Shown: positions 3,450-62,563 of the stretch, in pieces
How positions within the stretch are numbered: the stretch's first letter is position 1
Layout of the letters: the number at the start of each line of letters is the position of its first letter
Source of the DNA: Scyliorhinus canicula
Taxonomy: Eukaryota
Assembly: GCF_902713615.1 (NCBI RefSeq)
Contig: NC_052149.1
Location: 117,975,930-118,039,929 of the forward strand
Reading direction: 5' to 3'
DNA length: 64,000 nucleotides
The notes under the pieces: generated by a model
What the model saw: the letters and a program-made list of their open reading frames with translations, nothing else
What the model was told of the DNA's origin: nothing
Database searches by the model: none
Position numbers and translations under genes: made by a program

Positions 3450-3499
3450 GTACTTTAGAGTTTTGAGCATCTTCATTTGACGTCAAAGATGGCAAAACA

Positions 3500-3723
3500 G
3501 GGCAGCACGGTGGCCTAGTGGTTAGCACAACCGCCTCACGGCGCTGAGGTCCCAGGTTCGATCCCGGCTCTGGGTCACTGTCCGTGTGGAGTTTGCACAT
3601 TCTCCCCGTGTCTGCGTGGGTTTCGCCCCCACAACCCAAAAATGTGCAGAGTAGGTGGATTGGCCACGCTAAATTGCCCCTTAATTGGAAAAAATAATTG
3701 GGTAATCTAAATTTATTTTAAAA
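3500..3723 (+). mobile_element. Short HE1-related tRNA SINE, A-tail type
   Basis: tRNA-like A/B boxes (TGGCCTAGTGG, GGTTCGATCCC), A-rich tail, 15-bp TSD AAAGATGGCAAAACA (3485-3499 / 3724-3738). Confidence 0.92.
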
Positions 3724-4067
3724 AAAGATGGCAAAACATTGTTAATCTGCACTCAAATGCATTCCAAATTAAAACACTGATATCAAATTTCATTGATTAT
3801 ATTTGAGCACATACTGAATGCAAAATGTCAACATTTTCAGGTAGAGTTAGATTTAACAAAATACAACTTGGAATTAAAACCATTAATTTTATCTTCAAAC
3901 CAAAGACACAGTTACGTGCAAGAAATTTGCCCCAAACTTTGAAAATATGCAGAGTGGGAACAGAATGTATTTAAACCGTGTCCCAGGTTCCCCATGTGTT
4001 GCTACAGATATTTGCATGATATATGGGGTATATTGACCCACGCAGAAGCAGTATTAGAATAATTCTG

Positions 4068-4962: not shown

Positions 4963-7900
4963 TATAATGATGCAGAGATGGCTGACGGTAAACATAATAT
5001 ATGTTTATGTACAAATATTTACAAGGGTCTGCATAACACAGCATCTCACTCCAGTACAATCCAAGCTGGGAGAACTTCTCACCAGGTCATGATCTGGGAC
5101 TGCTTTTAACCTTGCTCATAACAAGCCCCAGGTGGTAGGTCTCCGTCAGTTACCTGTGAGCTCATATTTCACGTATCCCACGGGGAGATATTAAGGCTTC
5201 CCAGTGGTCCTCGTGGGGGTTCTGACACCCCTTCCCCGACAAAGTCCGAAAGCTCCTCTTCAACCACCAACGGAAGGGGCCTTCTGCAACTCTTTGCCCG
5301 CGGCGGTACCTCTGTCTGTGGCGGCGTTGGGTCAGGTAGAGTGTAACAAGGAGCTGAACGCCATTTCTGGTCGATGGCCAAAGAGCAACAGGCGGGATCT
5401 CGGGGCCAGACACACTGTCACCTGCCAGTGTGGATACGTCCATGTCCATGTCGGATCCTAAATCATCATCCTTATGCTGGATCAGGCGTAGAGTCCGGCT
5501 GCTCGAGGGGTAGTTTCTGATGCAACTAAGGCATTCCACCGTTACCTAGGCGTCCTGACTGGCAGGCTCATGCCTGGTTAAGTGGTCCAAATGTTCCTTG
5601 GGGGTCTTCCCCTGACCCCAGACTTTATAGGAAACCAGGCCTGTCCATTCCACTGTGTTCAACTGATATCTGAGCATAACCTCTGAGAAAAAGGATGAAT
5701 AGTCATTGGAAGGGCCTCCTTTGTACCGCCGCTCGTCAACATGAGCCGAAACTTCGCCGACTCCGAGTCTCGCTGTGTCCATGCATACACCCAAGCAGCC
5801 GTTACTAGGAAGGTATCCATAAAATTTAGAGTTGCAATCACTTCACCCACCACAGGTGGAGACGAGGCACTCACGGATAATGGCAGACAGAGGTTTAGCT
5901 GGATCACAGTGCGTAGTTGTTTCAAGAAGAGACGTTTCTTAACAGCAACAAATGCTTCGTCCTGAGAAGCACCCCAGCACCATTTCCGGACCTTGCTCAA
6001 CAATTCATGGAGTGGAGCCAGCAGAATGGCCAGGTGGTGACAAACGTCCTATAATAATTGACCAGGCCCAAAAAGGAACGGAGCTCAGCGGTGTTCCGCA
6101 GAGTCGGGACCCACTTTATGGTGCAAAATTTATCCTCTACCAGGTGAGACTGTCACTGTCCAGTAACCCAAATAGGTCACTGCCTCAGTACGGAAAACAC
6201 ACTTACTGCACTTCAGCCTGACACCCACGAGCAAACCGCCAGAGCACTTCCTGGAGATTCGCAATATGCTCCTGCTCTATGAATCCGGTAACCAGTATAC
6301 CATCTAAATAGATGGCTACCTTCAGCAAGCCCTGCAAGATGTTTCGCATTACTCGTTAAAAAATTGCGGGAGCCGACAAAACCCCAAATTGAAGGCGAGC
6401 ATTTTCAAACAATCCCCGATGGGTATTGATGATGGCATATTTTCTGGATTCCTGGACAAGCTTCACCTGTACGTATGCATGGCTCATGTCCAGCTTAGAG
6501 AATGACCAGCCTCCAGCCAATCTGTGCACCAGTCCAACCTCGGGGTTCTGTCGACGGTGTACTTAAAATCCCACAAAGCCAGTTTTATCGGGCTTCATCA
6601 CCGGCACCACAGATGCAGCCCATTGTGCAAACTGAACAGGGCGGATGACCCCTAGAACCTGCAGGCAGCACCACTCCTCATTAACCTTCAGGAGCAATGC
6701 GTATGGGATAGGCTTTGCCCTGTAGTACCAGGGAAGAGTAGCAGGATCTATGTAGACTTGAGCTCTGCCGCGCCCTTTATCCTGCCAAGACCCTCCTGGA
6801 ACCCAGCAGACCCCAGAGACTCCTGGTGCCCTTCTGAAAGACCCTTTGCCAGTTGAACCTGAGGACTCTCTGCCAGTCTCTACCTAACAAGTTGAGACCA
6901 CCACTAAAGGAAGACGGACTGACTGCTGCCCGTTCATCACCGATGCCGTGGCAGTCTCCAAGATCTTCAATGGTTCTCCAGTATTACTCTGGTATTCCGC
7001 AAATGCATCAGCATAATCCCTGTGCAAAGCCGCCGAAAGGTGCAGAGATCTATAATGGAGACAGCAGCCCCAGTGTCCATTAGCACTGGGTGCCCATTTA
7101 CCTGCAAAGTGATCTGAATCGGAGCTACCTTCGGAGCAATTGCATTAGACAGTTATCCTCCTCCACTTGCAAGGCCCTGGCCCGGGGCAACCTTGGCGGA
7201 TGTCGCAGATGGCGTGCCCTGCCACACCGGGTGATCCTGGCCCTCACGAGTTCCGCGACCACAATGCCAGCAAGGCAGATGGTGCTCACCCTCATCCTGG
7301 AGTGAAGTATCCCATCGGGCAGCGACAGCGCCCAAAACCTGCACTCTGCTGTATGACCCGCCTTGGGGGTTGCTCTGTCAGAGGAAATCTGGCTGGCCCC
7401 GCACAGTCCAGTGACCGATAGGGAGTCCGAAAAGGAGGGCGGCCCAAACTATGGACACCAAAGTCAATGGAGCCCTGCAGTTAATGCACACTTTTCTCCA
7501 TGTGCTTACAAGAGAGGGCAAGTTCAATTGCCCGCTTCAAATTCAATGTAGTTTCCGTTAACAATTTTCTCTGCATAGCCACACTGTTAATACCATGCAC
7601 GAGCCAGTCACTCAACATCTCTGAGGGAGATGCCCAAACTCGCAGTGTTCAGCCAGACGCTGCAACTGGGTCAAGAAATTCTTGACTAATTCACCAGGAG
7701 AGCGTACCACCGTGTTCAACCGATATTTGAGCATAATTACGGTAGGCTTGGGGTCATAGTGATTAGAAACCATAGCTACCAGTTCATCAAATGACCAGGA
7801 ATCCGGGTACGTCAAACTCATTATGATCCCAAGCCTCTGGGCCTGCACATGGCCAGGAGGAGACAGTCTTCCCCCAATATTCCATTCGCCTGGAAGAAGT

Positions 7901-8333
7901 ATCGCATACGTTCCGTATATTGATTCAAATTCTGCAGACCTGCATCGAAGGCCTCCAGTTTCCTGAATAACAGCATTGCTATTGATATGACGTGACTTTC
8001 CCTCCAGCGAACATCCGGCGGCTATGTGAACCAATGGGCGAGTCCGGAGTTTCTGTTAATCCTCGTCGCCAATTTAATGATGCAGAGAAGGTTAACGGTA
8101 AATGTAATATGGATTTATTTGCAAGTATTTACAAGGATCTGCATAACACAGCATCTCACTCCCAGTGCAATCCTAGCTGGGGGGACTTATCTCATTTGGT
8201 CCTGATCTGGGCCTGTTTTTAATCTTTGCTCATAACAAACCCCAGGTGGTAGGCCTCCTGGGGATGCATACTCCACAAGTCCCATGGGGACATCAATGAA
8301 AGCTTCCCCATGATACTCATGGGGGCTATGACA
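4963..8333 (-). mobile_element. Internally deleted, degraded Ty3/Gypsy LTR retrotransposon
   Basis: Two similar ~260-bp LTRs (4963-5227 and 8073-8333). PBS at 8059-8071, PPT at about 5228-5240. Gag remnant (HYDPKP..LAEHCEFG), protease DTGAAVS at about 7058-7080, RT YLDGIL at about 6295-6312. Degenerate TSD CTCCA/TTCCT inside a CR1 fragment. Confidence 0.9.
8059..8071 (-). promoter_or_regulatory. Primer-binding site, tRNA-Ser(GCU)
   Basis: Minus-strand TGGCGACGAGGAT next to the 5' LTR is complementary to the vertebrate tRNA-Ser(GCU) 3' end ATCCTCGTCGCCA (recalled sequence). Confidence 0.75.
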
Positions 8334-8344
8334 TTCCTGTATTA

Positions 8345-9385
8345 AAATTCCTCAGATACTGAACAAACTGTGTCCATATGCAGCAAGACCTGGTCAACCT
8401 TCAGACTTGGGCTGATCAGTAGCATGCAATGTTTGTGCCACTTATGCCAGGCAATTACCATCTCCCAACATTCAATGCCATTACCATTGTGGAATATCTC
8501 ACGATCAACATCCTTGGGGTTATCCACAGAATCCTTACAGTGCAGAAGGAAACCATTCGACCCATCAAGTCTGCACCAGCCCTCAGAAAGAGCACCCTAC
8601 TTTGGCCCATTCCCCCACTCTATCTCTGTAACTCCACTCGGCCTGCACATCCTTGGACTGTGGAAACAAAAAAACGAAGGATACCAACACAGACAAGGGG
8701 AGAATGTAAACTCCACACCATCACCCATTGTCAAAATTGAACCACTGTGCCACCATGCTGCCCTCAACGAGAAATTGAACTGGACTAACTATATAAATAC
8801 TGTGGCTACAAGAGCAGGTCAGAAGCCAGGAATTTTGCTGAGTAACTCACCTCTCGACTCTGCAAAGTCTGTCAAACATCAACAGGCCACAAATCAGGAG
8901 TGTGGTGGGAGTTCTTTCCACTTGCCTGGATGAGTTCAGTTCCAACAACACTCAGGAAGCTCGGCAACACAAAAGACAAAGCAGCCCACTTGATCGGCAC
9001 CCCACCCACCATCTTAAACATTCACTCGCTCAACCACTGCAGCAACTAACCCAGGCTGCTTCGACTGCACCTTCCAAATTCATGACCTCTACCAACGAGA
9101 AGGGCAAGAGAAGCAGATGCATTGAAACACAACCATGTGCAAGTTCCCCTCCATGCCACACACCATCCTGATTTGGGGCTGTATTGCTGTTCCTTCGCTG
9201 TCAATGGGTCAAAATTATGGAACTCCCTTCCTGACAACACTGTGGCTGTACCCACATAAACTGGATGCAGCAGTTCAAGCAGGAGGCTCATCGCCACCTT
9301 CACACGGGCAATTTGGAATGGACAATAAATGTTAGAATAGCCAGCTGCACCAACATCCTGTGAACAAATAAAAGATTTTAACATT
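8345..9385 (+). mobile_element. Old CR1/L2-group LINE 3' fragment, interrupted by a SINE
   Basis: LNWTNYINTVATRAGQKPGIL and DKAAHLIG-like remnants; the same 3' end occurs reversed at about 43715-43925. Confidence 0.7.
8528..8764 (-). mobile_element. Degraded HE1-type SINE
   Basis: Reverse complement of CR1-like tail (cagtgcagaaggaaaccattcg) and of the head (ccactgtgccaccatgctgccc). Confidence 0.75.
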
Positions 9386-36996: not shown

Positions 36997-39524
36997 CAAC
37001 TTGCTCATTTATTATTGGGCGGCTAACATTGAGAAGGTGCTGGAATGGTTAATGGAACCAAGCCCCATGGGGGGGAACAGATGGGGGAAAGCTCCTGTAG
37101 GAGTTCTAGTCTAAGAGCTTTGGCAACAGCCTTGCTCCCTTTCTCTCCGATGAAGTACTCTTCGAACCTGATGGTGATACCCACTCTTAAAATATGGAGG
37201 CAATTTAGACAGCATTGCAAATTGGGTTCCATGTCATTGCTGGCCCTTATCTGTGGCAATCACCTATTTGTTCCGTCGAATTTAGACGCACCGTTTAGGT
37301 CATGGGAGGAGAAGGGCCTTGGGAGTGTTAGGGATCTATTTGTGGAGGAACGGTTTGCTAGTTTGGAGGTATTATCAAAAAGGTTTCAACTTTCGGCTAT
37401 GAGCTTGTTCCATTACTAAGTGCGTAATTTTTCTTCAGAAGGCTTTTCCCACATTCCCCTTGGCTCCGCAATCCTCCTTGTTGAGTAAGATCCTATCACT
37501 TGCAGGGCCTGATGATCGAAGTATTTCCAGCAACTACGGGCAAACCTCGTCAACAGAGGTAGCCCCACTAGGTGAGGTGCGAACAAAATGGGAGGAAGAA
37601 TTTTAGATGGAGATGTGTGACCCTTCGCAGGATGAACTCCACATCCTCCTATGCACGACTCAGTCTAATTCAGCTCCACAGCTCCACTAACTAAAGCTAG
37701 AAATGGAGGACAGGTGCATGGTGTTCTTTGAGATCTGCTAATCACATCCGTATGTTCTGGTCATGTCCCAGGATGGCAACCTTTTGGGTCTCTTTCTTTA
37801 ACACCATGCCAATGATTCTTTTATTAAAATATTTTTCTTCAATGATTACATTTTTACATTTTTACACAAACAGTACCCGGCACCCCCCAACACCTCTTGA
37901 CAGTAACCAGGTCTCCAAAGTGCAAAATGAACAAGCCCAATCTCTGGTGGAACCCCCCCACTTGTCCTTCTCAGAGCAAATTTTACCTTTACCAAGTCCA
38001 AAATCTCCAACACGTCCCGTAGTCACACAGAGGCACTGGGGGAAGAAGCTGACCTCCACCCCAACAGTACCTGCCAGCAAGCAATCAACAAGGCGAAGGT
38101 TAAGACGTTTGCCCCCGCTCCCATCTGCAACTCCAGCAGGTCCGACACCCCGAATATGGCCCCTAGGGGACCCGGCTCCAATTCCATATGCAGAACCTCG
38201 GACATGGTGCGAAAAAATGACCCCCAATATCTCGCCAACTTTGGGCAGGACCAGAACATATGGACATGGTTGACTGGGCCTCTCCTACATCACTTACAAC
38301 TATCTTCCACCTCCTAAAACAGCCGGCTCATCCTCACCTTAGTTAAGTGCGCCCAATACACCACTTTGAGCTGAATCAACACAGCTTCAAACACGATGTC
38401 GAGGCATTGACCCTTCGCAGCACTTCACACCATAATCCTTCCTCCAGCCTCATAACCAGCTCTTCTACCCATTTACGCTTAATCCCTTCCAAATTAGGGT
38501 TAGGGTTTGTGCATTCTCCCCGTGTTTGCGTGGGTTTCGCTTCCACAACCCAAAGATGTGCAGAATAATCATGCTAAATTACCCCTTAATTGGAAAAAAT
38601 GAATTGGGTACTCTAAGAAATTTTTTTTAAGTGTTTCTTGTGAAATTCTGCACTGACAAACCTAAAACCTTCCTCAGACTGCAGCCCATACTTCATCCTC
38701 AACTCCTCCAAATTCCAAATCTCCCCTCCAGAAACAGATCCTTCATCTCTTTCACCCCTTCCTACTCCCATGCCCGGAACCTCGCATCCACCTCCCCAGC
38801 TCAAACCTATGATTCAGTTTTATCAGCATCACCCTCGACCCCATCCTCAACTTGAAGTCGAAATTGCCCACAGATCCTCAGCGTAGCTGCCACTCCCAGA
38901 TTCCCTGAATACTTCCTTGGGGCAAGTGGTAGCAGCGCCGTTGCCAGCGCCCGCAACCCCTACCTCTTACAGGATCCCACCTCCATCCGCACCACAAAGC
39001 TTCCGACTCCTTCCTCCAGCCCCACACTTTCTCCGCATTCTCTGCCTAGGAATAGGGCAACAGATTCGGAAGAGCCAAGCCCCCTGTCAACTGCCGCTCC
39101 CTTTGGAGCACAGCCTTCCTTAACCTCGCCACCTTCTCTGTCCAAACAGCAAGACCAGCCTATCCGCCCCCTGAAAAAGTGCCTTTGGCAAAAAGACCGG
39201 TAGACACTGGAACAGGAACAGAACCCGCGGCAAAATATTCATTTTGACTGCCTGCACCCAGCGAGCTAACGACAAAAGGAAATATCCGACCTCCCCAGAT
39301 CCTCCTTCACCTTCCCTAACAGCCACGCCCAGCCCCATGCTACCTGCACCCCCAAGTAACCCGAAATGGCAACCCCTCCACTCCCACCTCTGTACCCGAA
39401 GGAGACACAACAAAACACTCACTTCCCTAAATTCAATTTATACCTCGAAAACGCCCCGAATTTACCTTGCAATCCCATTATGTCCCTCACCGAACAGCCC
39501 AGTCAGTGATATACAGCAGTAAGT

Positions 39525-39706
39525 ATGTATTCATTTCTATTATATTATATACTATAATATTCTATTATGTATTCTCATGTCTTTTCTTGAATTTTGTTTA
39601 ATTCCCTTTTCTTCCATGTACTGAATGATCTGTTGAGCTGCTTGCAGAAAAATACTTTTCACTGTACCTCGGTACACGTGACAATAAACAAATCCAATCC
39701 AATCCA
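39525..39706 (+). mobile_element. Rex1/Babar 3' UTR fragment
   Basis: Near-identical to about 54630-54776; (AATCC)n tail; splits the L1 YADD|LLLY coding sequence. Confidence 0.85.
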
Positions 39707-39977
39707 AGTCATCTGCGTACAGAGACATCCTATGCTCCAACCACCCCCCTCAGATAGCTCCACTAACTCCCTCCCTTTATCCACCCTGGCCTTAAATGTG
39801 ATGATCTCTCCCATCCCCCTCCCTCAGTATCGTCTTCAAACCACCATTGATGAGACCTCCCCAATTCAATTAAACTCCACATACTCCTCCATCACCCTCT
39901 CCATCTTGATTCAAAAGTTTGGATCCACCAGCAAGCCCACATCCAGCCTCTGGGCCGGCCCTTCTCCAAGACCACAT

Positions 39978-40329
39978 CGCAGCACGGTAGCATTGTGGAT
40001 AGCACAATCACTTCACAACTCCAGGGTCCCAGGTTTGATTCCGGCTTGGGTCACTGTCTGTGCGGAGTCTGCACATCCTCCCCATGTGTGCGTGGGTTTC
40101 CTCCGGGTGCTCCGGTTTCCTCCCACAGTCCAAAGATGTGCGGGTTAGGTGGATTGTCCATGATAAATTGCCCTTAGTGTCCAAAATTTCCCTTAGTGTT
40201 GGGTGGGGTTACTGAGTTATGGGGATAGGGTGGAGGTGTTGACCTTGGGTAGCGGGTAGGGTGCTCTTTCCAAGAGCCGGTGCAGACTCAATGGGCCGAA
40301 TGGCCTCCTTCTGCACTGTAAATTCTATG
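39978..40329 (+). mobile_element. Full HE1 SINE
   Basis: Head, core and tail ctgcactgtaaattctatg. Confidence 0.92.
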
Positions 40330-40616
40330 TAAAACCCAGTGCGGCGAATGATCCAATATCACAATCATCAAGTACTCCGCCTTCTTTACCCCCGCCGGCA
40401 ACACCTTCTCTACTATAAAAAGTCAATCCTCGAATACGCCTTGTTTACCGAGGAGAAAAACAAATACTCCCTGACCCGTGAATGCAAAAACCTCCACGGA
40501 TCTGCCCCTCCTATCTCCTTCATAAACACAGCTAACACCTTTACCTCACCCCCTAGGGGGAGCGAGTGTAACCGAGATCTACCCATCCTCAGGTCCAACA
40601 CCATATTCCAATCCTC

Positions 40617-40650
<34 letters not shown>

Positions 40651-43600
40651 TATCAGCTGTTGCGTGTCCAGGTCAGGTCCGGTATGGCTGCTGACATTCT
40701 CCTCACAAACCCAGCTTCGTCCCAGTTCAGGAAATACACGCAGACCAACACCACCAACCTCCCCTCCAGCACACCTGTCACTATCACGTAGCTGCCCCTT
40801 GATCCGCCACCACCGTTGCCATTTGGAACCTCACCCACAAGTATACCACCCCCATGCCCTACCATCAAAGTCAGAATGGAATGCCTGACACCCAGCCCTT
40901 TCTCAGCCTCACCTGGTCCTTTACCCTCAGCTGGATCTCCTGTAACAGCACCGTATCTGCTTTCAGACCCTTCAGATGCGAGAAAACTCGCACTCTCTTC
41001 ACCGGTCCCCCTACAACTCGTAAGTTCCACTTCACCTTTCTGACTGGAGGTCTCTCACACATAGACCCAAACCCCTCACAACCGTACTTCCAGTCCCCGT
41101 CTCTTAGGCAGGAACCTGCCCCGGCCCTAGTCACTGCCGACCCCACCTTCCCAGTAACCCCTCGCCACTTCCTCTTGAAAACACCTCAACCAGTATCGTG
41201 CGCCCCCCCCCCCCCCCCCCCCCCCCCCCAACCATTCACATCTCCCAGGCCCATCAAAACCTGCCCACACAGCTTCCAACAACCACGGCTCCTCCCTTCA
41301 CCTCACTGCCATTCACTAGCCAACATTACGTTTACTAGCACGGTGGCCCCTGCCAAAGCCCTGTCCCCCCACAGCAAAAACAAAACCACATCAACTCCAA
41401 TGCCCCCTCACCAATCCCCATTACTTCCAAAAAAAACCCAAAACAAAGCTTTACATAACACCCATACACAAAAAAGAACCCAACTCAGAAAAAACAAAGA
41501 AAAAACTCAGCCAAAAACCATCAAATATCCAAATTCAGTCCAATCCCAGGCCTTCTGCCGTCACAAATGTCTCTGCCTAAAAATAAAAGTCTTTGCCATT
41601 GTATGTGACCCTCCACTTCACCAGGTAGACGACACCAAACCACACATTGTGCTTATACAATGGCACCTTAGCCAGCTCTAACGTCAAGTCCTGGTATATA
41701 AGTATACCCTTGCCTTCCCACTCCAGTACGCACATCTACTCGCCCACCTCAGCTCGAGCCTCTGCTCGCCTACCTCAGCACTCTCTCCTTCACCTGTAAA
41801 TTATGAAAACAGATGATCACCATCCTCGGTGGCTCATTCATCTTCAGTTGTGACCGGTGGCCTCTGTCCAACTCGTACTGGAAAGGCTCCTCCCTCCCCC
41901 ATCAGTTTCGCCATCAGATCGGGGATAGACTCTGTCGGCCACAGGCCCTCCACCCCCTCAGGCAGGCCCATGATTCTCAGGATTTCTCCAGATCCTCCAC
42001 CTTAGCTCTGAGCCCTTTGTTGGCTTCCACAGCTCCTCACCCATTGAGGTGAACTATTCGCTATGTTGCGACAATGCCTCCTCCACCCCGTTCAACTTCT
42101 CTCCTTGCTCCACACCTCAACTGAAGTCTTCATCACTGCCGCCTATACCGGCGCAATTACCTTCTCCACCCATTCTTTCATCACAGTCATCATCTCCCTC
42201 CGAAGCACCTCCATATGCTTAACAGCCTCTCGAACTCCACCGACATCACCTCGGTCAGAGTTTCCACCGTGAGGGAAGCGGCCTCACTTGACGACCGAAA
42301 CCCCGCCATCTTTCTTCCGACGGGACTCACTCGATGGCGGCCTTTCGCTCGCCGTCTTCTTTCCAGCACCATTCTTCTGGGACTTCGACATTTCACGTCT
42401 TCCTTATAGCTTCCCACACCAACTCATTCATAAACTACCCCTAAAACCACACATAAAAAGTAAAAACAAAACAGAGACTCCATCTACATGCCAGCACCAG
42501 AAGTCCCTGGTTATTGACATTCTATAAATGCCCTAGATCTTCCTCACGAACAAATCTTCACCAAAACCGGACTAAAAGGGCCATGGAAGAAAGTTCTGGC
42601 AGGAGCCACCAAACATGCGACCTCCACCTACATGCCGCAACCTGAAGTCCTCGCCAGCAATTCTTAACATTAATCTGGAACCTTGTCCTTTGGTGGCCAT
42701 TTTTGTGGTACCAGACTCATCGGGGTTGCAGATGGAGGTGAAGGCAGATGTTCTCGCCTTTGCCTCGCTAATAGCCTGGAGGCGATTCAGGGTGGGATGG
42801 AGACCTGAGGTGGTAGCCATTCATTTCCTACTTTAAAGAATTAATCACCATCAGCTGTTAGGGGAGGTGGGTGGTGATAGTTCTTATTGTTGGGGAACGG
42901 GTGTTTCTCTCCTGGGTGGGCTTCAAATGATTGGTTCTGTTTTTTCTAATCTTGCATTGTGTAACATCCGTTTTCCTTGTTGATATTGTGTATTTTGTTT
43001 GTTATAAATGAAAACTCTCAAGTTAACACATTTTAAAAAATTTTACAGATGCAGCCGTGTTGGATCTTCAACGCCTTCAGCCTGCTCTAATTACATTACA
43101 CAAATAAAAGGCAAATGCCAAGGATCCATCACACTGATAAGCCAACCTCATTAAAACAGATTTTGTGATCTCAATTACGTCTCCACCCATGGCTAACGTT
43201 TCTGTGTTGCTGCTGGGTTGCACAGTGGGTCAATGGTCACATATGAAATTAAGAGTAGCGAGCTCAGGGTGCAACTTGCAAAGGCTGCAGATACTGTATT
43301 GCCCGAGGAGACCAAGAGGAAATGAGACAAACATTTCAGACACAGAAAACCTCGAAACTGCACACCGGACATGTATTGGCCAGTGAAATAGAACACCAGT
43401 AGCTGTCTAGTGTCGTGTCAGAAGTACACATTCTTCCCACCTTATTAATATGCTTGTAATTTCCACTGTAATATTTTATCGCAAGTGACTACGGCACTCG
43501 TATCTTTCAACGTATAGATTGATTATAATGGGATCTTGCACTAAGTTGAAGTAAATTCATTCCATAATTACAATCATGGGCATGATTCACAATACTGAAG

Positions 43601-43925: not shown

Positions 43926-44235
43926 AAATTATCTCAATTATTGTACTGGACGGGAAGGAGTTACAGCGAAGGTACAGTGGCTATTTGCCTCTTTTGATGC
44001 AAGCAACACTCGATCCACACTCTACATTTACCACCCGTTGCACAATTCTGGTCTATTTACTAAAACTCCCTCATGACAGGAGTAGATTATCTGTTGCAGC
44101 CGATATATATCAGCAATCTAGGGTATCTGCTCCATCTCCAAACTCTTGCTATTGCCTTCAGGCATCAATTACCAATGCAAGTATTGACTCCAGGAAAAAG
44201 ACACAGGAAACCAGTTCACTTCAACTTCCCTGAAG

Positions 44236-44449
44236 AAGGCGCAGTGCTGAGCTCTGCTGCCTCAGGGCACTGAGGACCCGGGTTCGATCCCTGCCCCGGG
44301 TCACTGTCATGTGGAACTTGCTCATTCTCCCAGTGTTTGTGTGGGTCTCACCCCCACAACCCAAAGATGTGCAGGGTAGGTGGATTGGCCAAGCTAAATC
44401 ACCCCTTAATTGTAAAAAAAAATTGAGTACTCTGAATTTAATTTTCAAA
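44236..44449 (+). mobile_element. Short A-tail SINE
   Basis: TSD AACTTCCCTGAAG (44223-44235 / 44450-44462). Confidence 0.9.
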
Positions 44450-44629
44450 AACTTCCCTGAAGCTTCAAACTTGTGTGAAAGATGCTCAAGGCGAGGAGAT
44501 AATTCACAAAACTATATATCACAAGTTTCTCTAAGTTCAGACACTTGTGCTGTTCTGTGTTCCAAAACAGGCTGAATTTTACAGCAGCTGGGAGAGAAGA
44601 TATTTGAATCAGTTTAATTTTCACTACTC

Positions 44630-44825
44630 CCTGCCTCACGGCGCTGAGGAACAGGTTCAAGCCCGGCCCTAGGTCAATGTCCGTGTGGATTCTGCACATT
44701 CTCCCAGTGTCTGCGTGGCTCTCACCCTCACAACCCAAAGATGTGCAGGTTAGGTGGATTGGCCATGCTAAATTGCCCCTTAATTGGAAAGAAAATCTGG
44801 CTACTCTAAATTTATTTTTAAAAAA
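44630..44825 (+). mobile_element. Short A-tail SINE, 5'-clipped
   Basis: Family match. Confidence 0.85.
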
Positions 44826-44960
44826 TAAATTAAACCTCTGATATAACTATATGGTTAGTAAGTAGCAAATACGAGAGTTGTGTCTTGATACATTCACTAC
44901 AATGCAAGTTCACAAATTCAGGGTTGCCACTGATCCTGACGTGCTAGTGAAGCTGGCATT

Positions 44961-46349: not shown

Positions 46350-46691
46350 ATATAAAAGACCAGGAGAGAGTGAAAAAAAATGATCAAATTATATCAGAAC
46401 TGGTTATACCAGATTCCACAGGTTGAAACTCTTTTCTCGAGAAAAGAGACGACTGAGGGCGAATCTGCTAGAGGTCTTTTAAGATTACCCAAAGGATTTG
46501 AAAAGGTAGACAGAAAAGATACTTCCATTTGCTGGAGAGACCAGAACCAGGCACTATAAATAGAAGACAGTCACTAATAAAATGCAACAGGGAATTTAAG
46601 AGAAATTTGTTTATTTATAGAGTGGTTGGAACTCACTATCAGAGGGGGGTACTTGAGAATACTGTCACAGATGTATTTAAGAAGAAGCTAG

Positions 46692-47768
46692 ATGACTTCC
46701 GGTGACGGCGGGCGGGAGACAGCTGTGCAATGGAGGGCTCCCATTCGGGAATGGCATTTTCGGGGCTTTAAGCCCGGTCCCAGGGTCCATGGAGGCGGCA
46801 AAAGCAGGGAGAAGGCACAGAGGAGGCACAGTGAAGACACAGTAAAGAAAAATGTCGAGGGTGAGCAAAAAAAGGCGGTAAATAAAACAGCTGAAGGTCC
46901 ATCGGGGAGTGGAAAGGTCACCGCGGGGTCACCAAGGAAAATGGAGGCTGGAGCACCAGGGGAGGCCGCATTGCTTACGGCTGAAGAAATAACTAAGGTG
47001 ATGGCTGCGGAATGCGAAAGGCAGTTTACAAAATACATGGAGGCAATGAGGAAGGAGATGAGGGAGGTTTTGAGTGTGCTGGTGGAGGAGGCGATTTCCC
47101 CGGTGACGACGGCGGTGGCGAGTGCAGTGGAGGAGGTGCGGGAGCAAGGGGAGGCGCTGAAGGAAGTGGAGACGACATTATTGCAGCACGGTGATCAACT
47201 TACCTCGATGGGGAAGGAGATGTGGAAGGTGATGGAGATTAACAAGGATCTGCGAGGAAAAATGGAAGACCTGGAAAACAGATCCAGGCGACAGAATTTG
47301 AGGATTGTGGGGCTGCCCGAAGGAGTTGAAGGGCCGAGGCCGACTGAGTATTTTGCCGCGATGCTGTCGAAACTATTGGGGGAGGGGGAGGATCCCTCCC
47401 GATATGAACTGGATCGGGCTCATCAGTCGTGGAGGCCTGTACCAAAGGCGAGTGAGCCGCCAAGGGTAGTGAATCTGTGCTTCCGTAGGTACAGTGTGAA
47501 GGAGAAGGTCCTGTGCTGGGCCAAGCAGAAGTGGGTTGTGCAGTGGGCTGGAGCTGGTATACTTGTATACCAGGAATTTACGGCGGAGCTGGCCAGGAGG
47601 CGGGCTGCTTTCAACCGGGTGAAGAGGGCACTGTACATCAGCAAGGTGCAATGCTGCACTGTATGTCCAGCAAAGCTGAGGGTGACTTACAAGCTCAAAG
47701 GCTTTTATTTTGGAACAGCAGAAGCAGCGGAGGAGTTTGCGAAGGCAGAAGGACTGTGGCAGAACTGA
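46692..47768 (+). CDS. L1 ORF1p-like RNA-binding protein (coiled coil, RRM, CTD; Transposase_22 family), transposon-encoded
   Basis: LENRSRRQNLRIVGLPEG, ELDRAH and PAKLRV motifs with a heptad-rich middle. The native start is more likely the ATG at 46852, which is out of frame in this copy. Confidence 0.85.
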   Translation: MTSGDGGRETAVQWRAPIREWHFRGFKPGPRVHGGGKSREKAQRRHSEDTVKKNVEGEQKKAVNKTAEGPSGSGKVTAGSPRKMEAGAPGEAALLTAEEITKVMAAECERQFTKYMEAMRKEMREVLSVLVEEAISPVTTAVASAVEEVREQGEALKEVETTLLQHGDQLTSMGKEMWKVMEINKDLRGKMEDLENRSRRQNLRIVGLPEGVEGPRPTEYFAAMLSKLLGEGEDPSRYELDRAHQSWRPVPKASEPPRVVNLCFRRYSVKEKVLCWAKQKWVVQWAGAGILVYQEFTAELARRRAAFNRVKRALYISKVQCCTVCPAKLRVTYKLKGFYFGTAEAAEEFAKAEGLWQN

Positions 47769-48542
47769 GAAATTGAGAAATGGCCATGTGCCGATGTAAC
47801 CTCATGACTGTATTTACTTTTTTGTTTCACTGCGTGCGGGTGTATGGGCTAAAGGAGCCAATGTTGTATATATTTGGACAAGGGAAGCGATGGGACTTTC
47901 ACTCGAAGTGAGGGCTCTTTAGGGTGTAGGTGGATATGCGGGGTTTGTGTGCTAAAAGGGGATTTCTGGGCTTTCCTAGGGCCGGGCAAGAGGGAAAGGG
48001 ACCCGGGCGGGGCATCCATGCTGGCCGGTTTAAACCGGCCAGTGAATGGGAGTGAGGTAGGGGGAGGGGCTGTGGCCATCGGAGCCTGGCAGAACAGGGT
48101 CCGAGTGGTCTAGCCGGGGTGGAAAGTTGGGGGGAAGGAACCGAGGTTGGGGGGAGAAGTTTTACAAGAGGCAGTGGACGGGTGGAGTTGGAAAGGGGGG
48201 AGGGGGTGTTTACAACTCTTGGGTATCATGTACGGTACTCTTTCAGAGCTTGGATGGCGTTGAGTGCAAAGGGGGGGGGGGGGGGGGGGGGTAGTGGACT
48301 CTATGGTGACCATGGGCGGTCCCGGATTCCTTTTTCTTTGTTTTTTGTTTCCACCGTGGGACGGTTTGTTTTATTGGATGCATATCTTGACAGGTGGGCC
48401 GTTGTTTGGAGTGGTGGGAGGATGGGATCGTTGTTATTGTTAAGGGGATTGATTTTGTATTTGTTACCGTTTACTGTCTATGGGTGAGGTGTAAATTTTG
48501 AAGGAAAATGTGAAAATGGAGAATAAAAAAGTTTTTTTTAAA
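46694..48542 (+). mobile_element. ORF1-only (HAL1-like) non-autonomous L1 element
   Basis: 5' end GACTTCCGGTGACGGCGG, ORF1, about 770 bp with no recognisable ORF2, AATAAA at 48522, and a 12-bp TSD AAGAAGCTAGAT (46682-46693 / 48543-48554). Confidence 0.85.
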
Positions 48543-49380
48543 AAGAAGCTAGATAAACAGGAGGGGGTAAGGAACAGAAGGATATGTTAATAGGGCTCGA
48601 CGAAGGGTCAGTGGAGGTTCATGTGGAAGCTAAATAACAGTATGGAGCCAAGTGGCCTGTGTAAGTACTGCAAATCCTGTGTAAATCTTGCTTGGACTTT
48701 GGCCGTTTATGAATTCTCCCTAATTGTTAACAGAAAAGTAAATTTCTAAATAACTGCGTTCAACTGAATTTGTATATTAACTTCCACAGCTAAGAACTGT
48801 AAACATAACCAAAAATAAATAACAGAAACTAGCTTCATGTTTGTTTAATTATACGCGTCACCAGATTTTCTAAATAGTTCTTTGCTGAACCACCTGTTAA
48901 ACTTCTGTTCATTGTACAGAACAGTGTGTGATTGTTATGTTCTGTGGATCTGTCACCAGGTTACAGCAAACAGCTGACTGTTATTAAGCCAACACATGAA
49001 ATTGCCAATGCTTAAAACTGGTCAAACATCTACAAAATATTTTGGTCTGGTATGAGTGAAATACAAGCACTAATCATTCATTCACACTAGTTAACCTTTC
49101 ATAAGTGAATTACTCACATATTCTTTTGACCCAGTTATCAGTTTGGTTCCATTTCATTTATCACTCCAACACTGCGCCAATTTTTCACACACATCTTTAT
49201 GAGGAGATGCACCCATGGATGCAAATGCACTACAGCAGAAACTGAAACATAAGACTAACCAAGCCCAATAATACTCAAACCCAGTTGGAAGCTGAGGAAG
49301 ATTAAAGCTTTAAATACCTAGAAACAAATTTTCAGTCACACTGAAGCCAGCATGAAAATCAAACATGAGTAGATTCTGTA

Positions 49381-55302: not shown

Positions 55303-56572
55303 ATGCTCATTTCACTGCAATCACTTCCTTAAATCACCTTTTCATTTCAACAGCAGTCCCTTCTAGTCAATAATTGCATTATAGCATGTGCCTGTGCGGT
55401 TCAAAAACAGAATATTTACCTGAAATATTGAAACCTTTTTCACAACTGATATTATGGAACTGTTTCCAACATAAGACCTGAAATGTAGTATTTGTTACTC
55501 ATATATTTGTCACCAGAACCCTATACTTAATATTCACCATTTAGAAATCTGCAGACAGGCCAAAAGTTCAGCTCTTCAAGGATTCAATTCTTCAGCTGGA
55601 TCTTGGTGTTATAATAAACACAAAGTCCTTACTTAAAACACCTGGTGACAGCCAAGTGCAGCATTACGTTTTCATGCTGCTTAAGTACAAACTATCTTCC
55701 AAGAACAATCAACAGCTGTTATCAATAAAGGGGGTGGGGGGGGTGAAATCAACATTGGAATCTCTCTTTATCCTCCAATAAAATACCAATTCATCAGTGC
55801 CGAGAATAGTGCAGAGGAGTTACCTTGACATGAAGTGCTGTTCTGAGTGAGGAATTTTCTTGTGGAGGAAAATAATCCATGAGTAATCTCATTTAATACA
55901 ATAACATTTCCTCAGTGTTACAATCCACATTATTCATGCTTCAATCTTTTGATTCCTAGTTTTAAACTTGCCATTATATTAAACACTGTACATTTGAAAA
56001 CAATCATTAAGATAATTTCTTAGTTACTTGAATCAAAATGTTTCTTGAAAACACCATATAAATGCCCCTGAAGATCAGTGGAGGAAGATACAGGACAACA
56101 GAATAAGGCGCCCAATATTTGTTAATGGGTAATCGCACTCATCAGAATCCTCTCACAAGCCCACAAAAACTGGATTCGGCAAATGTTCCCCACTCCTACA
56201 TTTGATCTATTGTCGGTAACATTTTGTACAGAATGTGAAAGTTCCATTTCACATCCAAACATGGAGAATGGTGTTTTAGCAGCAACATATAGCGAGAGTA
56301 CATTTGGAAAGAAAATCCAGCAGAAACAATTCCTAAGCAGACGTTCCAATAGCAGAAACTTGGGTGCACAAGATTGAAATATTTACAACTATGAGAAAAT
56401 TCACATGACAGTAGCAATACTGTATTTCAATCTCTGCTGCATTCTAAAGTGGTCATGGTCTACTTTGATCCAAAACCTCACATTATGCTGACAATACAGG
56501 TCTCCAGGGAATATTATTTCAGATTTCAAACAGGTTGTAAATTGTTATACTTCAGTTAAGTCACTCATTGAC

Positions 56573-56794
56573 AGAGTAGCATGGTGGCGCAGTGGTTAGC
56601 ACTGCTGCCTCATGGCACCAAGGATCCGGGTTCGATCCCGGCCCCAGGTCATAAGCCGCCTTTGCATATTCTTCCCATGTCTGCTTGGGTTCCACTTCTA
56701 CAACACAAAAAGATGTACAGGGTAGGTGGATTGGCCAAGCTAAATTGCCTCTTAATTGGAAAAAAAATAATTGGGTACCCTAAATTATAAAAAA
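56573..56794 (+). mobile_element. Short A-tail SINE
   Basis: TSD AAGTCACTCATTGAC (56558-56572 / 56795-56809). Confidence 0.9.
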
Positions 56795-57254
56795 AAGTCA
56801 CTCATTGACTAAACTTGTCGAAGTATCTTTCGGGTGGTAACATAAATTATCGTCCTTGAGACTAATATATTGAGCAGAAAGGCAGGCCATCTATCCAATT
56901 CACGAAGAATGCCAAAACGGCACCCTAAATATTCAACACATCTATTGTCAAAGGCTGAAAATGCAGCAAATATCCATTTCAAGAGCGGTCTTATAGCTGA
57001 TGGGGAATCAGTCTGGTAATAGGAACGGTCACACCAGTCAAATTACCCTTTGTCAAAAGGCCAAAGAAAATTTGACATTGTGAATTAATTAAAATTCATT
57101 TTTTACGTTATTTTCTGCTCAAAACCAATAGTTCAGGATATCAATCAATGAATAGGACAGAACAAGCCAGAAAATAATCAATCAAGCATGTGATTTTACG
57201 CAAGGAGATCCTGGAAAAGTACAAGTTACAGTAGTAAACAGTGAAAACTCACTA

Positions 57255-59973: not shown

Positions 59974-62563
59974 TTTTTTTTTAATAAACATTTTATTGAG
60001 GTTTCTTTGGTATTATAACAACAACACAATAAACAATGTATTTGAAACTATAAACATTGTGCAAAAGCCGTCTCCCTCCCTTACAGGTCCCATCTTTATT
60101 AACCTCCTACTCGAAGATAAACTAACCCCCCCACCTTCTGCAGCGATTAATTTTCCGCGAAGAAGTCGACGAACGGTTGCCACCTCCGGGCGAACCCTCA
60201 CAGTGACCCTCTCAAAGCGAACTTGATTTTCTCCAAACAGAGAAAGATAGCCATGTTTGATAGCCAGGTCTCTGACTTCGGGGGCTTTGAGTCCCTCCAA
60301 GCTAATAATATCCGTCTCCGGGCTACCAGGGAAGCAAAGGCCAGAACGTCTGCCTCTTTCTCCTCCTGGATTCCCGGGTCTTCCGACACCGCGAAAATCG
60401 CCACCTCTGGACTCCGCGCCATCCTTGATTTTAACAACGTGGACATGACATCCGCAAACCCCTGCCAAAATCCCCTAAGCTTCGGACAAGCCTAGAACAT
60501 GTGGACGTGGTTCGCTGGTCCTCCCGTATATTTTGCACACCTGTCTTCCACCCCAAAGAATCTGCTCATCCGGGCCACTGTCATGTGAGCCCGGTGAACG
60601 ACCTTAAATTGTATCAGGCTGAGCCTGGCACATGTTGCGGATGTGTTGACTCTACTCAACGCGTCCGCCCATAGACCATCCTCTATCTCTCCTCCCACTT
60701 CTCCCACTTGCGCCTCAGCTCCTCGGTCTGCGTCTCCTCTGACCCCATAAGTTCCTTGTAAATGTCAGAGACGCTCCCTTCTCCTACCCACCCTCTAGAA
60801 ATGACCCTGTCCTGAATCCCCCTTCGCTGTAGGAGCGGGATGGTTTACACCTGTTTACGTAGGAAGTCCCGCACTTGCAGATACCCAAATTTGTTTCCCC
60901 TCGCCAACCCAAACTTCTCCTCCAGCGCCCTCATACTTGGAAAGCTCCCCTCTATAAACATATCCCCCATCCTCTCAATCCCTGCCCTCCGCCATATCCG
61001 GAAACCCCCATCCATACTTCCCGGGGCAAACCGGTAATTATTACAGATTGGGGACCAGACCAATGCTCCCTCTGCTCCCACATGTCTCCTCCATTGCCCC
61101 CACACTCTCAGGGCCGCCAGCACCACGGGGCTGGGGGAGTACTGTGCCTGGCGGGAGGAGTACTGTGCCTGGCGGGAACGGCAGAGGCGCAATTACCAAA
61201 GCCCCCAAACTGGTGCCCTTACATGAAGCCGCCTCCATACGCTCCCATGCCGACCACCCCCCTCCCACCACCACCCACTTCCTGACCATGGCTATATTCG
61301 CCGCCCAGTAATAGTTACTAAAATTTGGCAGCGCCAGCCCGCCCTCTCCACAACTCCGCTCAACATTACCTTCCTTACCTGCGGGGTCTTGCCCGCCCAA
61401 ACAAAGCCAGAGATCACTTTGTTGACCCGTTTTAAAAAAGGACCACGGAATAAAGATGGGGAGGCATTGAAACACGATCAGGAATCTCGGGAGGACCGTC
61501 ATCTTCATCGTCTGTATCCTCCCAGCTAATGACAATGGGAGCGTGTGCCATCTCCGAAAGTCCTTCATTTGGTCTACTCATCGGGCCAGATTTAATTTAT
61601 GCAACCAGTCCCATTCCCGCGCCACTTGAATGCCTAGGTACCTCAAGCTTCCGCCTACTAATCTAAACGGCAGCTCCCCCAATCGCCTCTCCTGTCCGCC
61701 CGCCTGGACCGCAAACATCTCACTTTTCCCCATATTTAGCTTATACCCCGAAAACCGGGATAATTCCCCTAGAATCCTCATGATTTCTTCCATCCCCTCT
61801 ATTGTGTCCGATACATACAGGAGCAGGTCGTCTGCATAGAGCGAGACTCTGTGCTCCACACACACACCCCCCCCCCTAAACCCCCCCCCCCCCCCCCCCC
61901 TGAGGCTCTCAGAGCAATTGCCAACGGCTCTATAGCTAGCGCGAACCGAACAACAGTGGGGAGAGGGGGCATCCCTGTCTCGTCCCCCGGTGCAGTCTAA
62001 AATAGTTTGATTTGTCCTATTTGTCTGTACACTTGCCACAGGAGCCTGATACAGCAACCTGACCCAGTCAATAAAGCCTCACCCAAATCCGAACTGTCCC
62101 AGTACCTCCCACAGATAATCCCAAAATATACGGGAGGACCAGCGAACCACGTCCACATGATCTACCCGATCAAAAGCCTTTTCTGCATCCATTGCGATCA
62201 CTACCTCCACCTCCCTACCTTCTGGGGGCATCATGATCACGTTTAACAACCTTCTTACATTGGCCACCCAACTGCCTACCCGTAACGAACCCCGTCTGGT
62301 CCTCCCCAATAACGTCCGGAACACAATCCTCAATCCTGGAGTACAAAATTTTGGCCAGCAGTTTGGCATCCACATTCAACAGGGATATCGGCCTGTAGGA
62401 CCCACACAGCTCCGGGTTCTTGTCCCACTTCAGAACCAGCGAAATCGTGGCCTGTGACATCATCGGGGGCAGCACCCCTCTTTCCCTTGCCTCATTGAAC
62501 ATCCTCATCAACACCAGCGCCAATATCCCAGAGAAAGTTTTATAAAACTCCACTAGGTACCCG
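59974..62563 (-). mobile_element. 5'-truncated L1-clade LINE (ORF2 RT and C-terminus, poly-A)
   Basis: SYRPISLLNVDAK, DAEKAFDRV, SLYADDLLLY, GGLALPNF and NHVHMF; T-run at 59974; several frameshifts. Confidence 0.93.

What the first reader, a model, noticed from the sequence alone, without database searches (positions are those of the whole stretch)
46682..48554. Complete ORF1-only 'half-L1' retrotransposon in a shark-like genome
Seen: a 1.85-kb unit with an L1-type 5' end, a stop-free ORF1 body, a tail lacking any EN/RT remnant, AATAAA and a perfect 12-bp TSD. Known: HAL1 elements encode ORF1 only and borrow ORF2p; I know them mainly from mammals. Inference: this may belong to an independently evolved chondrichthyan HAL1-like family that supplies its own RNA chaperone while parasitising L1 ORF2p. 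One copy cannot exclude a post-insertion deletion.
Basis: partly seen in the sequence, partly recalled or inferred. Interest (0 to 1): 0.75.

Follow-up and report, generated by a model that had tools for sequence, protein, structure and literature searches.

The report
Catshark ORF1-only half-L1 retrotransposon
This is a 1.85-kb jumping element in a catshark genome that keeps the first gene of an L1 retrotransposon but has lost the reverse-transcriptase gene. It has inserted at three or more separate places, so it most likely borrows the enzyme from complete L1s, as mammalian "half-L1" (HAL1) elements do.

Summary
Window 46694-48542 (+) is a discrete insertion flanked by a perfect 12-bp target-site duplication. 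It carries an L1-type ORF1, a 774-bp tail with no detectable endonuclease or reverse-transcriptase remnant, AATAAA and a short A tail.

The short form is not a local deletion. Two more copies in Scyliorhinus torazame (L001, L002) have the same first and last bases but different flanks and TSDs (18 and 14 bp).

One correction: the 358-aa ORF is partly fortuitous. Its ATG is created at the TSD junction. The upstream ATG used by the 305-aa L001 gene call (46852) is frameshifted here. The ORF shared and intact in all three copies is 275 aa (46941-47768).

An old ORF2-bearing L1 in the same window (42506-37818, minus strand) matches the element's 5' end, ORF1, inter-ORF spacer and last ~95 nt. So the element looks like an L1 minus ORF2.

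The ORF is kept open, with no stops or frameshifts against 17 indels in the non-coding parts. Amino-acid-level selection is not demonstrable. The autonomous parent or partner was not found, and Repbase/Dfam status could not be checked.

Verdict: a real HAL1-like family, a new member of a known kind, of moderate interest. First readers of this scan flagged 13 similar elements elsewhere in this genome; those notes are unchecked.

The parts
46682..46693 (+). left copy of the 12-bp target-site duplication (AAGAAGCTAGAT)
   Evidence: homology to the other copies starts right after it (A1)
46694..48542 (+). the ORF1-only L1 derivative (1849 bp): 5'UTR, ORF1, ORF2-less tail and short A tail
   Evidence: 89.5% identical over 1-1836 to L001 7843-9664. 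Three separate matches to L002, the longest 88.5% identical over 1176 aligned bases. Alignment A1.
46694..46940 (+). 5'UTR (247 nt), GC- and CpG-rich. Begins G-ACTTCCGGT (46695-46703), which reads as a class-I ETS site on the other strand. Contains short upstream ORFs.
   Evidence: The first bases are nearly invariant in the three copies (the second base differs in L002); the CTTCCGGTGACGG core that follows is invariant (A1). The old L1 at 42506 starts GGGACTTCTGGTG. The ETS reading is from my own knowledge of the motif and was not tested.
46852..46874 (+). upstream ATG (46852-46854) that starts the 305-aa gene call in L001, put out of frame here by a 1-bp deletion after the A-run 46867-46873
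   Evidence: A1 column 229. The L001 gene call 8001-8918 starts at this ATG.
46941..47768 (+). ORF1 as shared by all copies (275 aa plus TGA). N-terminal coiled coil, then RRM and CTD (about 47256-47699). ARR-like and (Y)PAKL motifs are present, but the Y is C in this copy.
   Evidence: Intact in the window, L001 and L002.
47769..48270 (+). front part of the tail. Its segment 47992-48154 is homologous to the ORF1-ORF2 spacer of ORF2-bearing shark L1s. Includes a 22-nt palindrome/hairpin at 48021-48042.
   Evidence: 62% over 164 nt to old L1 spacer, E 7e-11. Alignment A3. Fold -25.6 kcal/mol, z -4.2.
48271..48291 (+). 21-nt poly-G run, the likely neighbourhood of the junction where ORF2 was lost
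   Evidence: G-runs also lie in the spacer of old L1 and the L002 LINE (A3) and in L1 3'UTRs. The junction itself is inferred.
48292..48448 (+). T/G-rich stretch of unresolved origin (either a relic of the first ORF2 codons or the upstream 3'UTR)
   Evidence: Only weak likenesses. No Pfam or tblastn signal.
48449..48542 (+). 3'-terminal ~95 nt resembling L1 3'UTR ends. AATAAA at 48522-48527, then G, T8 and A3.
   Evidence: Colinear local alignment with the 3' end of the old window L1: L001 copy score 26 against 11.3 +/- 1.7 (0 of 200 shuffles); window copy 18 (1 of 200).
48543..48554 (+). right copy of the 12-bp TSD
37818..42506 (-). Comparator, not part of the element: an old, degraded L1 with a similar 5' end, decayed ORF1 (42232-41547), ~470-nt spacer with poly-G, ORF2 EN (41179-40416), ORF2 C-terminal part (39499-37954) and 3' end (~37818). 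It is interrupted by a SINE near 40340-39980.

Best explanation
The element is a non-autonomous derivative of a catshark L1 in which the whole of ORF2 has been lost. What remains is the 5'UTR with its promoter, ORF1, most of the ORF1-ORF2 spacer and the 3'-terminal UTR with its polyadenylation signal.

Proposed life cycle:
1. It is transcribed from its own 5' end, and all copies begin at the same base.
2. It is polyadenylated after AATAAA.
3. Its RNA is probably coated in cis by its own ORF1p, a coiled-coil/RRM/CTD protein.
4. It is copied into new A/T-rich sites by target-primed reverse transcription, using ORF2p supplied in trans by complete L1s of the same genome.

This is how mammalian HAL1 elements are thought to work, but the family arose independently inside the shark L1 lineage.

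Shown here: the anatomy, the independent insertions, the absence of ORF2, the homology of the remaining parts to an ORF2-bearing shark L1, and the ORF being kept open.

Inferred: trans-mobilisation by L1 ORF2p, the cis role of ORF1p, promoter use, and loss of ORF2 near the G-runs.

The window copy itself is probably dead. The upstream ATG used in L001 is frameshifted, it carries the most private changes, and the Y of the (Y)PAKL motif is C.
For: - Three copies share identical termini but have unrelated flanks and different TSDs of 12, 18 and 14 bp.
- Target sites read TT|AAGA, GT|TAAT and TC|AAAC, which fits an L1-type endonuclease (the EN preference is from established knowledge).
- The ORF1 profile matches L1 ORF1p structures at E 4e-31.
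- No EN/RT signal is found in the tail.
- The 5' end, ORF1, spacer and 3' end are each homologous to an ORF2-bearing L1 in the same window.
- Distant ORF1 homologues (L004, L005) and the S. torazame L1 in L003 all have ORF2 roughly 550-650 nt downstream of ORF1. The absence of ORF2 here is therefore derived.
- L1-clade ORF2 elements exist in the genus. The L002 LINE matches human ORF2p RT at 4e-68 and EN at 2.5e-33.
- Two structural subfamilies exist. L002 has a shorter tail and a 9-bp in-frame insertion.
- The ORF stays open. It has no stops (expected 2.9, P 0.054) and no frameshifts. Its single gap block is in frame, against 17 gap blocks in 1064 non-coding columns.
- All three sampled carriers of this ORF1 type are the short form.
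Against: - Only three copies were verified. Genome-wide copy number is unknown.
- No autonomous L1 with a near-identical ORF1 or UTRs was found. The sampled full L1s have ORF1 only 33-52% and 36% identical.
- Amino-acid-level purifying selection is not shown. NG86 omega is 0.48-0.61. After matching for CpG, transition and transversion classes, 26 synonymous changes are observed against 23.1 expected, P 0.27.
- Many non-coding indels sit at homopolymers (11 of 17), so the indel contrast is weaker than it looks. Using non-homopolymer events only, P is about 0.02.
- The 3'UTR likeness is strong for only some copy/L1 pairs.
- A tails are very short (3-9 nt).
Confidence: 0.8

Rival explanations
1. 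Sporadic dead-on-arrival products. One or a few internally deleted L1 loci were occasionally retrotransposed, without forming a self-sustaining ORF1-dependent lineage. ORF1 would then be a passenger and not a contributor.
For: The class-matched substitution test shows no excess of synonymous changes (P 0.27). Only three copies were verified. No parent was found.
Against: Two structural subfamilies each have an open ORF. There are no stops or frameshifts in 825 nt across copies differing by 6-8%. Unchecked first-reader notes list 13 more such elements, seven of them 1.82-1.86 kb, in this genome.
Confidence: 0.12
2. A domesticated ORF1-derived host gene (L1TD1-like) whose mRNA has been retrocopied several times. 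The copies would then be processed pseudogenes of a cellular gene.
For: NCBI annotates two of the copies as 'uncharacterized protein' genes. All copies share one transcription start and one poly(A) site, as retrocopies of a single mRNA would.
Against: The 5' end, spacer and 3' end are L1 non-coding parts, not a host gene's UTRs. The copies carry no intron-loss signature. Two subfamilies have different tails. The annotated 'genes' are themselves TSD-flanked insertions.
Confidence: 0.05
3. Local post-insertion deletion of ORF2 from an ordinary full-length L1, or an assembly collapse at the poly-G run.
For: A 21-nt G-run lies where ORF2 should begin. Homopolymers invite both deletions and assembly errors.
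Against: The same ORF2-less structure occurs at two other loci in another assembly, each with its own TSD.
Confidence: 0.02

Closest known systems
Mammalian HAL1 / half-L1 (HAL1, HAL1b, rat RNHAL1)
   Same: An L1 derivative that keeps the 5' region and ORF1, lacks ORF2, is retrotransposed with TSDs, and is thought to use L1 ORF2p in trans. HAL1 is reported to have arisen repeatedly (PMC5753468). Rat RNHAL1 has about 7500 copies and was derived by ORF2 deletion (PMC2241872).
   Different: The host is a catshark. ORF1 is far diverged from human ORF1p: the window protein alone matches it only at E 0.006, and its nearest ORF2-bearing relative found is a shark L1. So this is an independent origin, not descent from the mammalian families. 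The tail keeps a ~500-nt inter-ORF spacer with a poly-G run. The immediate parent L1 was not identified, whereas RNHAL1 is 98% identical to the active rat L1.
Drosophila HeT-A (Jockey clade telomeric retrotransposon)
   Same: A non-LTR element that encodes only the Gag/ORF1-like protein and depends on another element's reverse transcriptase (my own knowledge; compare bioRxiv 10.1101/2025.06.09.658640, listed but not read).
   Different: It belongs to a different LINE clade, targets telomeres and has a host-beneficial role. Nothing of that kind is seen here.
L1TD1 (domesticated L1 ORF1 gene of mammals)
   Same: An ORF1-derived coding sequence without ORF2 (PMC4161310).
   Different: L1TD1 is a single-copy host gene. 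The element here is a TSD-flanked, multi-copy insertion with L1 UTRs.
Ordinary bicistronic L1 of fishes and sharks (for example L003 1171-5750, L004, L005, window 42506-37818)
   Same: Same ORF1 type, same style of 5' end, a long G-rich inter-ORF spacer, and a T/G-rich 3'UTR ending in AATAAA, a T-run and an A-run.
   Different: Those elements carry a ~3.8-kb ORF2 (EN plus RT) about 550-650 nt after ORF1. This element goes from the spacer straight into the 3' end.

Membership tests
L1 ORF1p (coiled coil + RRM + CTD; Pfam Transposase_22 group) | RRM and C-terminal domain homologous to solved L1 ORF1p | tested here: met
   Profile A2 against PDB: 2ykp E 4e-31, covering chain residues 3-208. Mouse 2ldy 5.5e-27, 2jrb 2e-16. 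The single sequence scores E 0.006.
L1 ORF1p (coiled coil + RRM + CTD; Pfam Transposase_22 group) | Match to Pfam PF02994 above threshold | tested here: not met
   The window protein alone has no significant Pfam match. 11 of 19 aligned relatives hit PF02994 (best 1.4e-7). Membership therefore rests on the profile-to-structure match.
L1 ORF1p (coiled coil + RRM + CTD; Pfam Transposase_22 group) | N-terminal coiled coil | tested here: met
   Profile positions ~40-130 hit many coiled-coil chains and the L1 ORF1p coiled coil 6fia.
HAL1-type (half-L1) non-autonomous retrotransposon, as a kind | L1-derived ORF1 present and open | tested here: met
   A 275-aa ORF is intact in all three copies. The 305-aa form is intact in L001.
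HAL1-type (half-L1) non-autonomous retrotransposon, as a kind | No ORF2 (EN/RT) sequence between ORF1 and the poly(A) site | tested here: met
   tblastn with S. torazame L1 EN/RT/C-terminal pieces gives a best E of 0.07. Pfam finds nothing on tail ORFs. A relic of 13 codons or fewer cannot be excluded.
HAL1-type (half-L1) non-autonomous retrotransposon, as a kind | The short form itself transposes: several copies with the same ends and different TSDs | tested here: met
   The window, L001 and L002 have TSDs of 12, 18 and 14 bp and unrelated flanks. Genome-wide count not available.
HAL1-type (half-L1) non-autonomous retrotransposon, as a kind | Derived from an L1 by loss of ORF2 (the remaining parts are colinear with a full L1) | tested here: inconclusive
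   The 5' motif, ORF1, spacer and 3' end are homologous to a diverged ORF2-bearing L1. No close parent (over 85% identity) was found. L003 is from another lineage.
HAL1-type (half-L1) non-autonomous retrotransposon, as a kind | ORF1 maintained by selection | tested here: inconclusive
   The frame is kept open, but the class-matched synonymous excess is not significant, P 0.27.
HAL1-type (half-L1) non-autonomous retrotransposon, as a kind | Mobilised in trans by L1 ORF2p | not testable with these tools
   Inferred from the TSDs, target sites and A tails. L1-clade ORF2 elements are present in the genus.
Mammalian HAL1 families (by descent) | Sequence descent from mammalian L1M/HAL1 lineages | tested here: not met
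   The closest relatives are S. torazame copies (85-87%), then proteins of 41% identity or less from short unnamed contigs, teleosts and frogs. The nearest ORF2-bearing relative found is a shark L1.

The most novel reading that the evidence does not exclude
Catsharks harbour a long-lived, multi-subfamily, ORF1-only L1 parasite that has not been described or catalogued. It would be the first documented HAL1-type family outside mammals. It would have been born by loss of ORF2 between the G-runs of the inter-ORF spacer and the 3'UTR. Its persistence would depend on its own ORF1p capturing ORF2p from complete L1s. That would make 'half-L1' parasitism a general, convergent outcome of L1 cis-preference and not a mammalian peculiarity.
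Probability: 0.35. Interest if true: 0.55.

Novelty: new member of a known kind. Interest (0 to 1): 0.4.

Why it matters
HAL1 elements are the standard example of a parasite of L1 that brings its own RNA-binding protein. In the papers I could read they are described only from mammals.

A structurally equivalent family arising independently in a shark would show that loss of ORF2 with retention of ORF1 is a recurrent route for L1 derivatives across vertebrates.

It would also give a second, very distant system for asking whether ORF1p in cis helps an RNA compete for ORF2p.

It is useful for annotation too. At least two copies are annotated as protein-coding genes in S. torazame, one of them as a spliced isoform.

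The finding does not change how L1 biology is understood.

Tried and rejected
- Pfam on the window ORF1 alone found nothing relevant. This was resolved with a profile.
- No other copy of the element lies in the window.
- A search for a paralogous 'empty site' of the host repeat found none in the window or loci.
- Looking for the autonomous parent through the only S. torazame ORF2-like protein in the word search (P0025, L003) found an L1 of another lineage, with ORF1 36% identical.
- The element's 3' 250 nt compared with four L1 3'UTRs was not significant under stringent scoring. With softer scoring only some pairs stand out. A global alignment including the 'GGTCAAT' likeness to the L002 LINE 3'UTR is not robust.
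- The idea that 48293-48325 is a relic of the first ORF2 codons (W-N-V-R-G-L-N-G-P) rests on a weak alignment and stays unresolved.
- NG86 dN/dS of 0.48-0.61 looked like selection. It does not survive matching for CpG, transition and transversion classes.
- An exact-match scan of JGI metagenome contigs with an invariant 34-mer gave 0 hits.
- Literature searches for HAL1 outside mammals or in sharks found nothing. The key HAL1 paper (Bao & Jurka 2010, PMC2923044) is not held.
- The search of earlier findings by sequence was blank.
No N run was touched. The alignment tool prints a majority line by itself, and I did not use it.
Full report
**1. What is there**

Window 46694-48542 (+) is a discrete 1849-bp insertion.
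- It is bounded by a perfect 12-bp direct repeat, AAGAAGCTAGAT, at 46682-46693 and 48543-48554.
- It is G-rich on the + strand and much more GC-rich than its surroundings, 0.48-0.61 against about 0.36-0.41.
- It ends with AATAAA (48522-48527), then G, T8 and A3.
- No second copy lies in the window.

**2. The coding part**

The mechanical ORF 46692-47768 (358 aa) is L1 ORF1.
- The single sequence has no significant Pfam match.
- It does hit human L1 ORF1p (2ykp) across the RRM and CTD at E 0.006.
- Its database relatives are named L1 RRM-domain or LINE-1-type proteins and carry PF02994.
- A profile of 19 relatives (A2) hits 2ykp at E 4e-31, mouse 2ldy at 5.5e-27 and the ORF1p coiled coil 6fia.
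- The (Y)PAKL motif aligns exactly with human YPAKL, and one Arg of the ARR motif aligns.
- In the window copy the Y of that motif is C. The two other copies keep Y.

The 358-aa length is partly an accident.
- Its ATG is built from the last two TSD bases plus the element's first G.
- The upstream ATG that starts the 305-aa gene call in L001 corresponds to 46852. It is out of frame because of a 1-bp deletion after the A-run 46867-46873 (A1 column 229).
- L002 also breaks this N-terminal stretch, with an 11-bp deletion.
- From the next ATG (46941, with A at -3 and G at +4), all three copies have an intact ORF of 275-278 aa.
- Either 46941 is the real start and the upstream ATG is a uORF, or two of the three copies are N-terminally damaged.

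**3. The short form is a family, not a local deletion**

The closest proteins are two 'uncharacterized proteins' of Scyliorhinus torazame: P0001 at 87% and P0002 at 85% identity. Their loci, L001 and L002, are two places on chromosome CM105026.1 of GCA_047496885.1. Each holds an ORF1-only copy.
- L001 7843-9664 is 89.5% identical over element positions 1-1836.
- L002 7752-9263 has a shorter tail.

Both start at the same base, G(G)ACTTCCGGTGACGG. Both end with AATAAA and a short A-rich tail.

Each has its own TSD: TAATGTAATGACTTGTGC (18 bp) in L001 and AAACCATGAATATT (14 bp) in L002. Their flanks are unrelated.

The target sites read TT|AAGA, GT|TAAT and TC|AAAC. These are A/T-rich, as expected for an L1-type endonuclease (the preference is established knowledge).

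L002 represents a second structural subfamily. It carries three large tail deletions, a 14-bp insertion and an 11-bp deletion in the 5' region, and a 9-bp in-frame insertion in ORF1.

**4. No ORF2, and where the tail comes from**

I used L1 ORF2 pieces taken from S. torazame itself, from the LINE at L002 6936-3001 (minus strand). That LINE is L1-clade: its RT matches human ORF2p 8sxt at 4e-68 and its EN matches 1vyb at 2.5e-33.
- These pieces find many ORF2 fragments elsewhere in the window.
- They find nothing in the element. The best E is 0.07, inside ORF1.
- Pfam is blank on all tail ORFs.

The window also holds an old L1 on the minus strand (42506-37818). In order, it has:
- a similar 5' end (GGGACTTCTGGTG);
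- a decayed ORF1, 33-52% aa identical to ours;
- a ~470-nt spacer with a poly-G run;
- the ORF2 endonuclease (41179-40416);
- the ORF2 C-terminal part (39499-37954);
- a 3' end.

Two parts of the element's tail match that L1.
- Tail 47992-48154 is homologous to its spacer, 62% over 164 nt, E 7e-11 (A3).
- The last ~95 nt align colinearly with its 3' terminus. The L001 copy scores 26 against 11.3 +/- 1.7 (0 of 200 dinucleotide shuffles). The window copy scores 18 (1 of 200).

So every retained segment has a counterpart in an ORF2-bearing shark L1.

The stretch 48292-48448 is unresolved. The junction probably lies near the 21-G run (48271-48291). G-runs occur both in the spacer and in the 3'UTR of these L1s, which would favour deletion or template switching. 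This last point is inference.

Ordinary relatives confirm the ancestral state. Each of these has ORF2 roughly 550-650 nt after ORF1:
- L003, an S. torazame L1 with ORF1 36% identical to ours;
- L004 and L005, Logan contigs carrying distant ORF1 homologues.

**5. Is ORF1 under selection?**

Pairwise divergence by region:

| Region | Divergence |
|---|---|
| ORF | 6.1-8.1% |
| 5'UTR | 10-14% |
| Tail, window vs L001 | 6.7% |

- NG86 gives dN/dS of 0.48-0.61. This is inflated by transition bias.
- I polarised each change by the other two copies and matched for CpG-transition, transition and transversion classes. That gives 26 synonymous changes of 78 observed against 23.1 expected (P 0.27). Amino-acid-level constraint is therefore not shown.
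- The frame is nonetheless kept open. There are no stops where 2.9 are expected (P 0.054).
- The ORF has a single gap block, in frame, in 837 columns. The non-coding parts have 17 gap blocks in 1064 columns, 14 of them not multiples of three.
- At the full non-coding rate about 11 frameshifts would be expected in the ORF. Using only the 6 events away from homopolymers, about 4 would be expected (P about 0.02).
- I read this as follows: most divergence arose in source lineages that needed an open ORF1. With three copies the evidence is only moderate.

**6. Mechanism**

The best explanation is a HAL1-type life cycle: own promoter, own ORF1p, borrowed ORF2p.
- Steps shown: anatomy, independent insertions, ORF2 absence, L1 ancestry of the parts.
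- Steps inferred: trans-complementation, the cis role of ORF1p, and promoter use. The first bases contain ACTTCCGGT, which I recognise as a class-I ETS site; this was not tested.
- The window copy is probably dead. It has 33 private ORF changes against 16 and 29 in the others, the frameshift after the upstream ATG, and Y to C in the (Y)PAKL motif.

**7. Comparison with what is known**

- HAL1 is described as a non-autonomous L1 derivative encoding only ORF1p that arose several times in mammals (PMC5753468).
- Rat RNHAL1 has about 7500 copies and arose by ORF2 deletion (PMC2241872).
- My searches found no report of HAL1-type elements in sharks or other non-mammals. The library is incomplete, the key paper is not held, and Repbase and Dfam cannot be queried here.
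- By descent this is not a member of the mammalian HAL1 families. By kind it is the same thing.

**8. Earlier notes of this scan**

First readers flagged 13 'ORF1-only half-L1' elements in other windows of this genome. Seven of those listed are 1824-1856 letters long. None carries a follow-up text.

Follow-up agents described young full-length L1s in this genome (s1-243575, s1-213855).

These are unchecked leads that I could not verify. If true, they imply a multi-copy family and available ORF2p donors.

**9. Verdict**

It is a new, lineage-independent member of a known kind. Interest is moderate (0.4). It would be higher if a genome-wide census showed a large, long-lived family that is not yet catalogued.

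Noticed in passing
window 37818-42506 (minus strand): An old, degraded but near-complete L1: 5' end, ORF1, ~470-nt spacer, EN, ORF2 C-terminal part and 3'UTR. A SINE interrupts it near 40340-39980, and much of the RT appears to be missing. It served as the comparator for the half-L1.
   Followed up: partly
window 48021-48042; L001 about 9135-9156; window 41310-41335 (minus strand): A hairpin sits at the homologous place in the ORF1-ORF2 spacer. In the window element it is a perfect 22-nt palindrome (-25.6 kcal/mol, z -4.2). It is weaker in the L001 copy and in the old L1. One G-C to A-U exchange between lineages keeps a pair. The region is deleted in the L002 copy, so it is dispensable for the short element.
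   Followed up: partly
window 48271-48291 and 41195-41225 (minus strand); L002 about 6990-7010 (minus strand); L003 5470-5510: Long G-runs recur in the inter-ORF spacer, and again just after ORF2, in several shark L1 lineages. They are length-variable between copies. They may be recombination or slippage hot spots, or expression signals.
   Followed up: no
L002 8001-13806 and L001 8001-8918: NCBI gene models of S. torazame annotate two half-L1 copies as protein-coding genes. One is a spliced 'isoform X2' that starts in the element's ORF1 and continues into downstream exons. It lies on the same strand inside a larger gene model that spans the whole locus. This is probably TE-driven mis-annotation or exonisation.
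   Followed up: no
window 3497-3729, 21635-21867, 22122-22351, 44223-44828, 56571-56800 and others: Many copies of a tRNA-headed SINE family, 60-99% alike, occur on both strands.
   Followed up: no
window 24971-26028 (minus strand) and L001 3054-4442 (minus strand): A non-L1 LINE reverse transcriptase (RVT_1) is 92-93% identical in protein between the window and S. torazame. This fits the window coming from the same or a very close species.
   Followed up: no
window 60153-62562 (minus strand) and 22869-24874 (+): Further L1-clade ORF2 fragments lie here. The first is 53-61% aa identical, and the second up to 65%, to the S. torazame L002 LINE. At least three L1 lineages are therefore present in 64 kb.
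   Followed up: no
L001 15531-16331 (minus strand); L002 14047-14985 (+): Multi-finger C2H2 zinc-finger ORFs lie within about 6 kb of both S. torazame half-L1 copies. This is probably coincidence in ZNF-rich regions.
   Followed up: no
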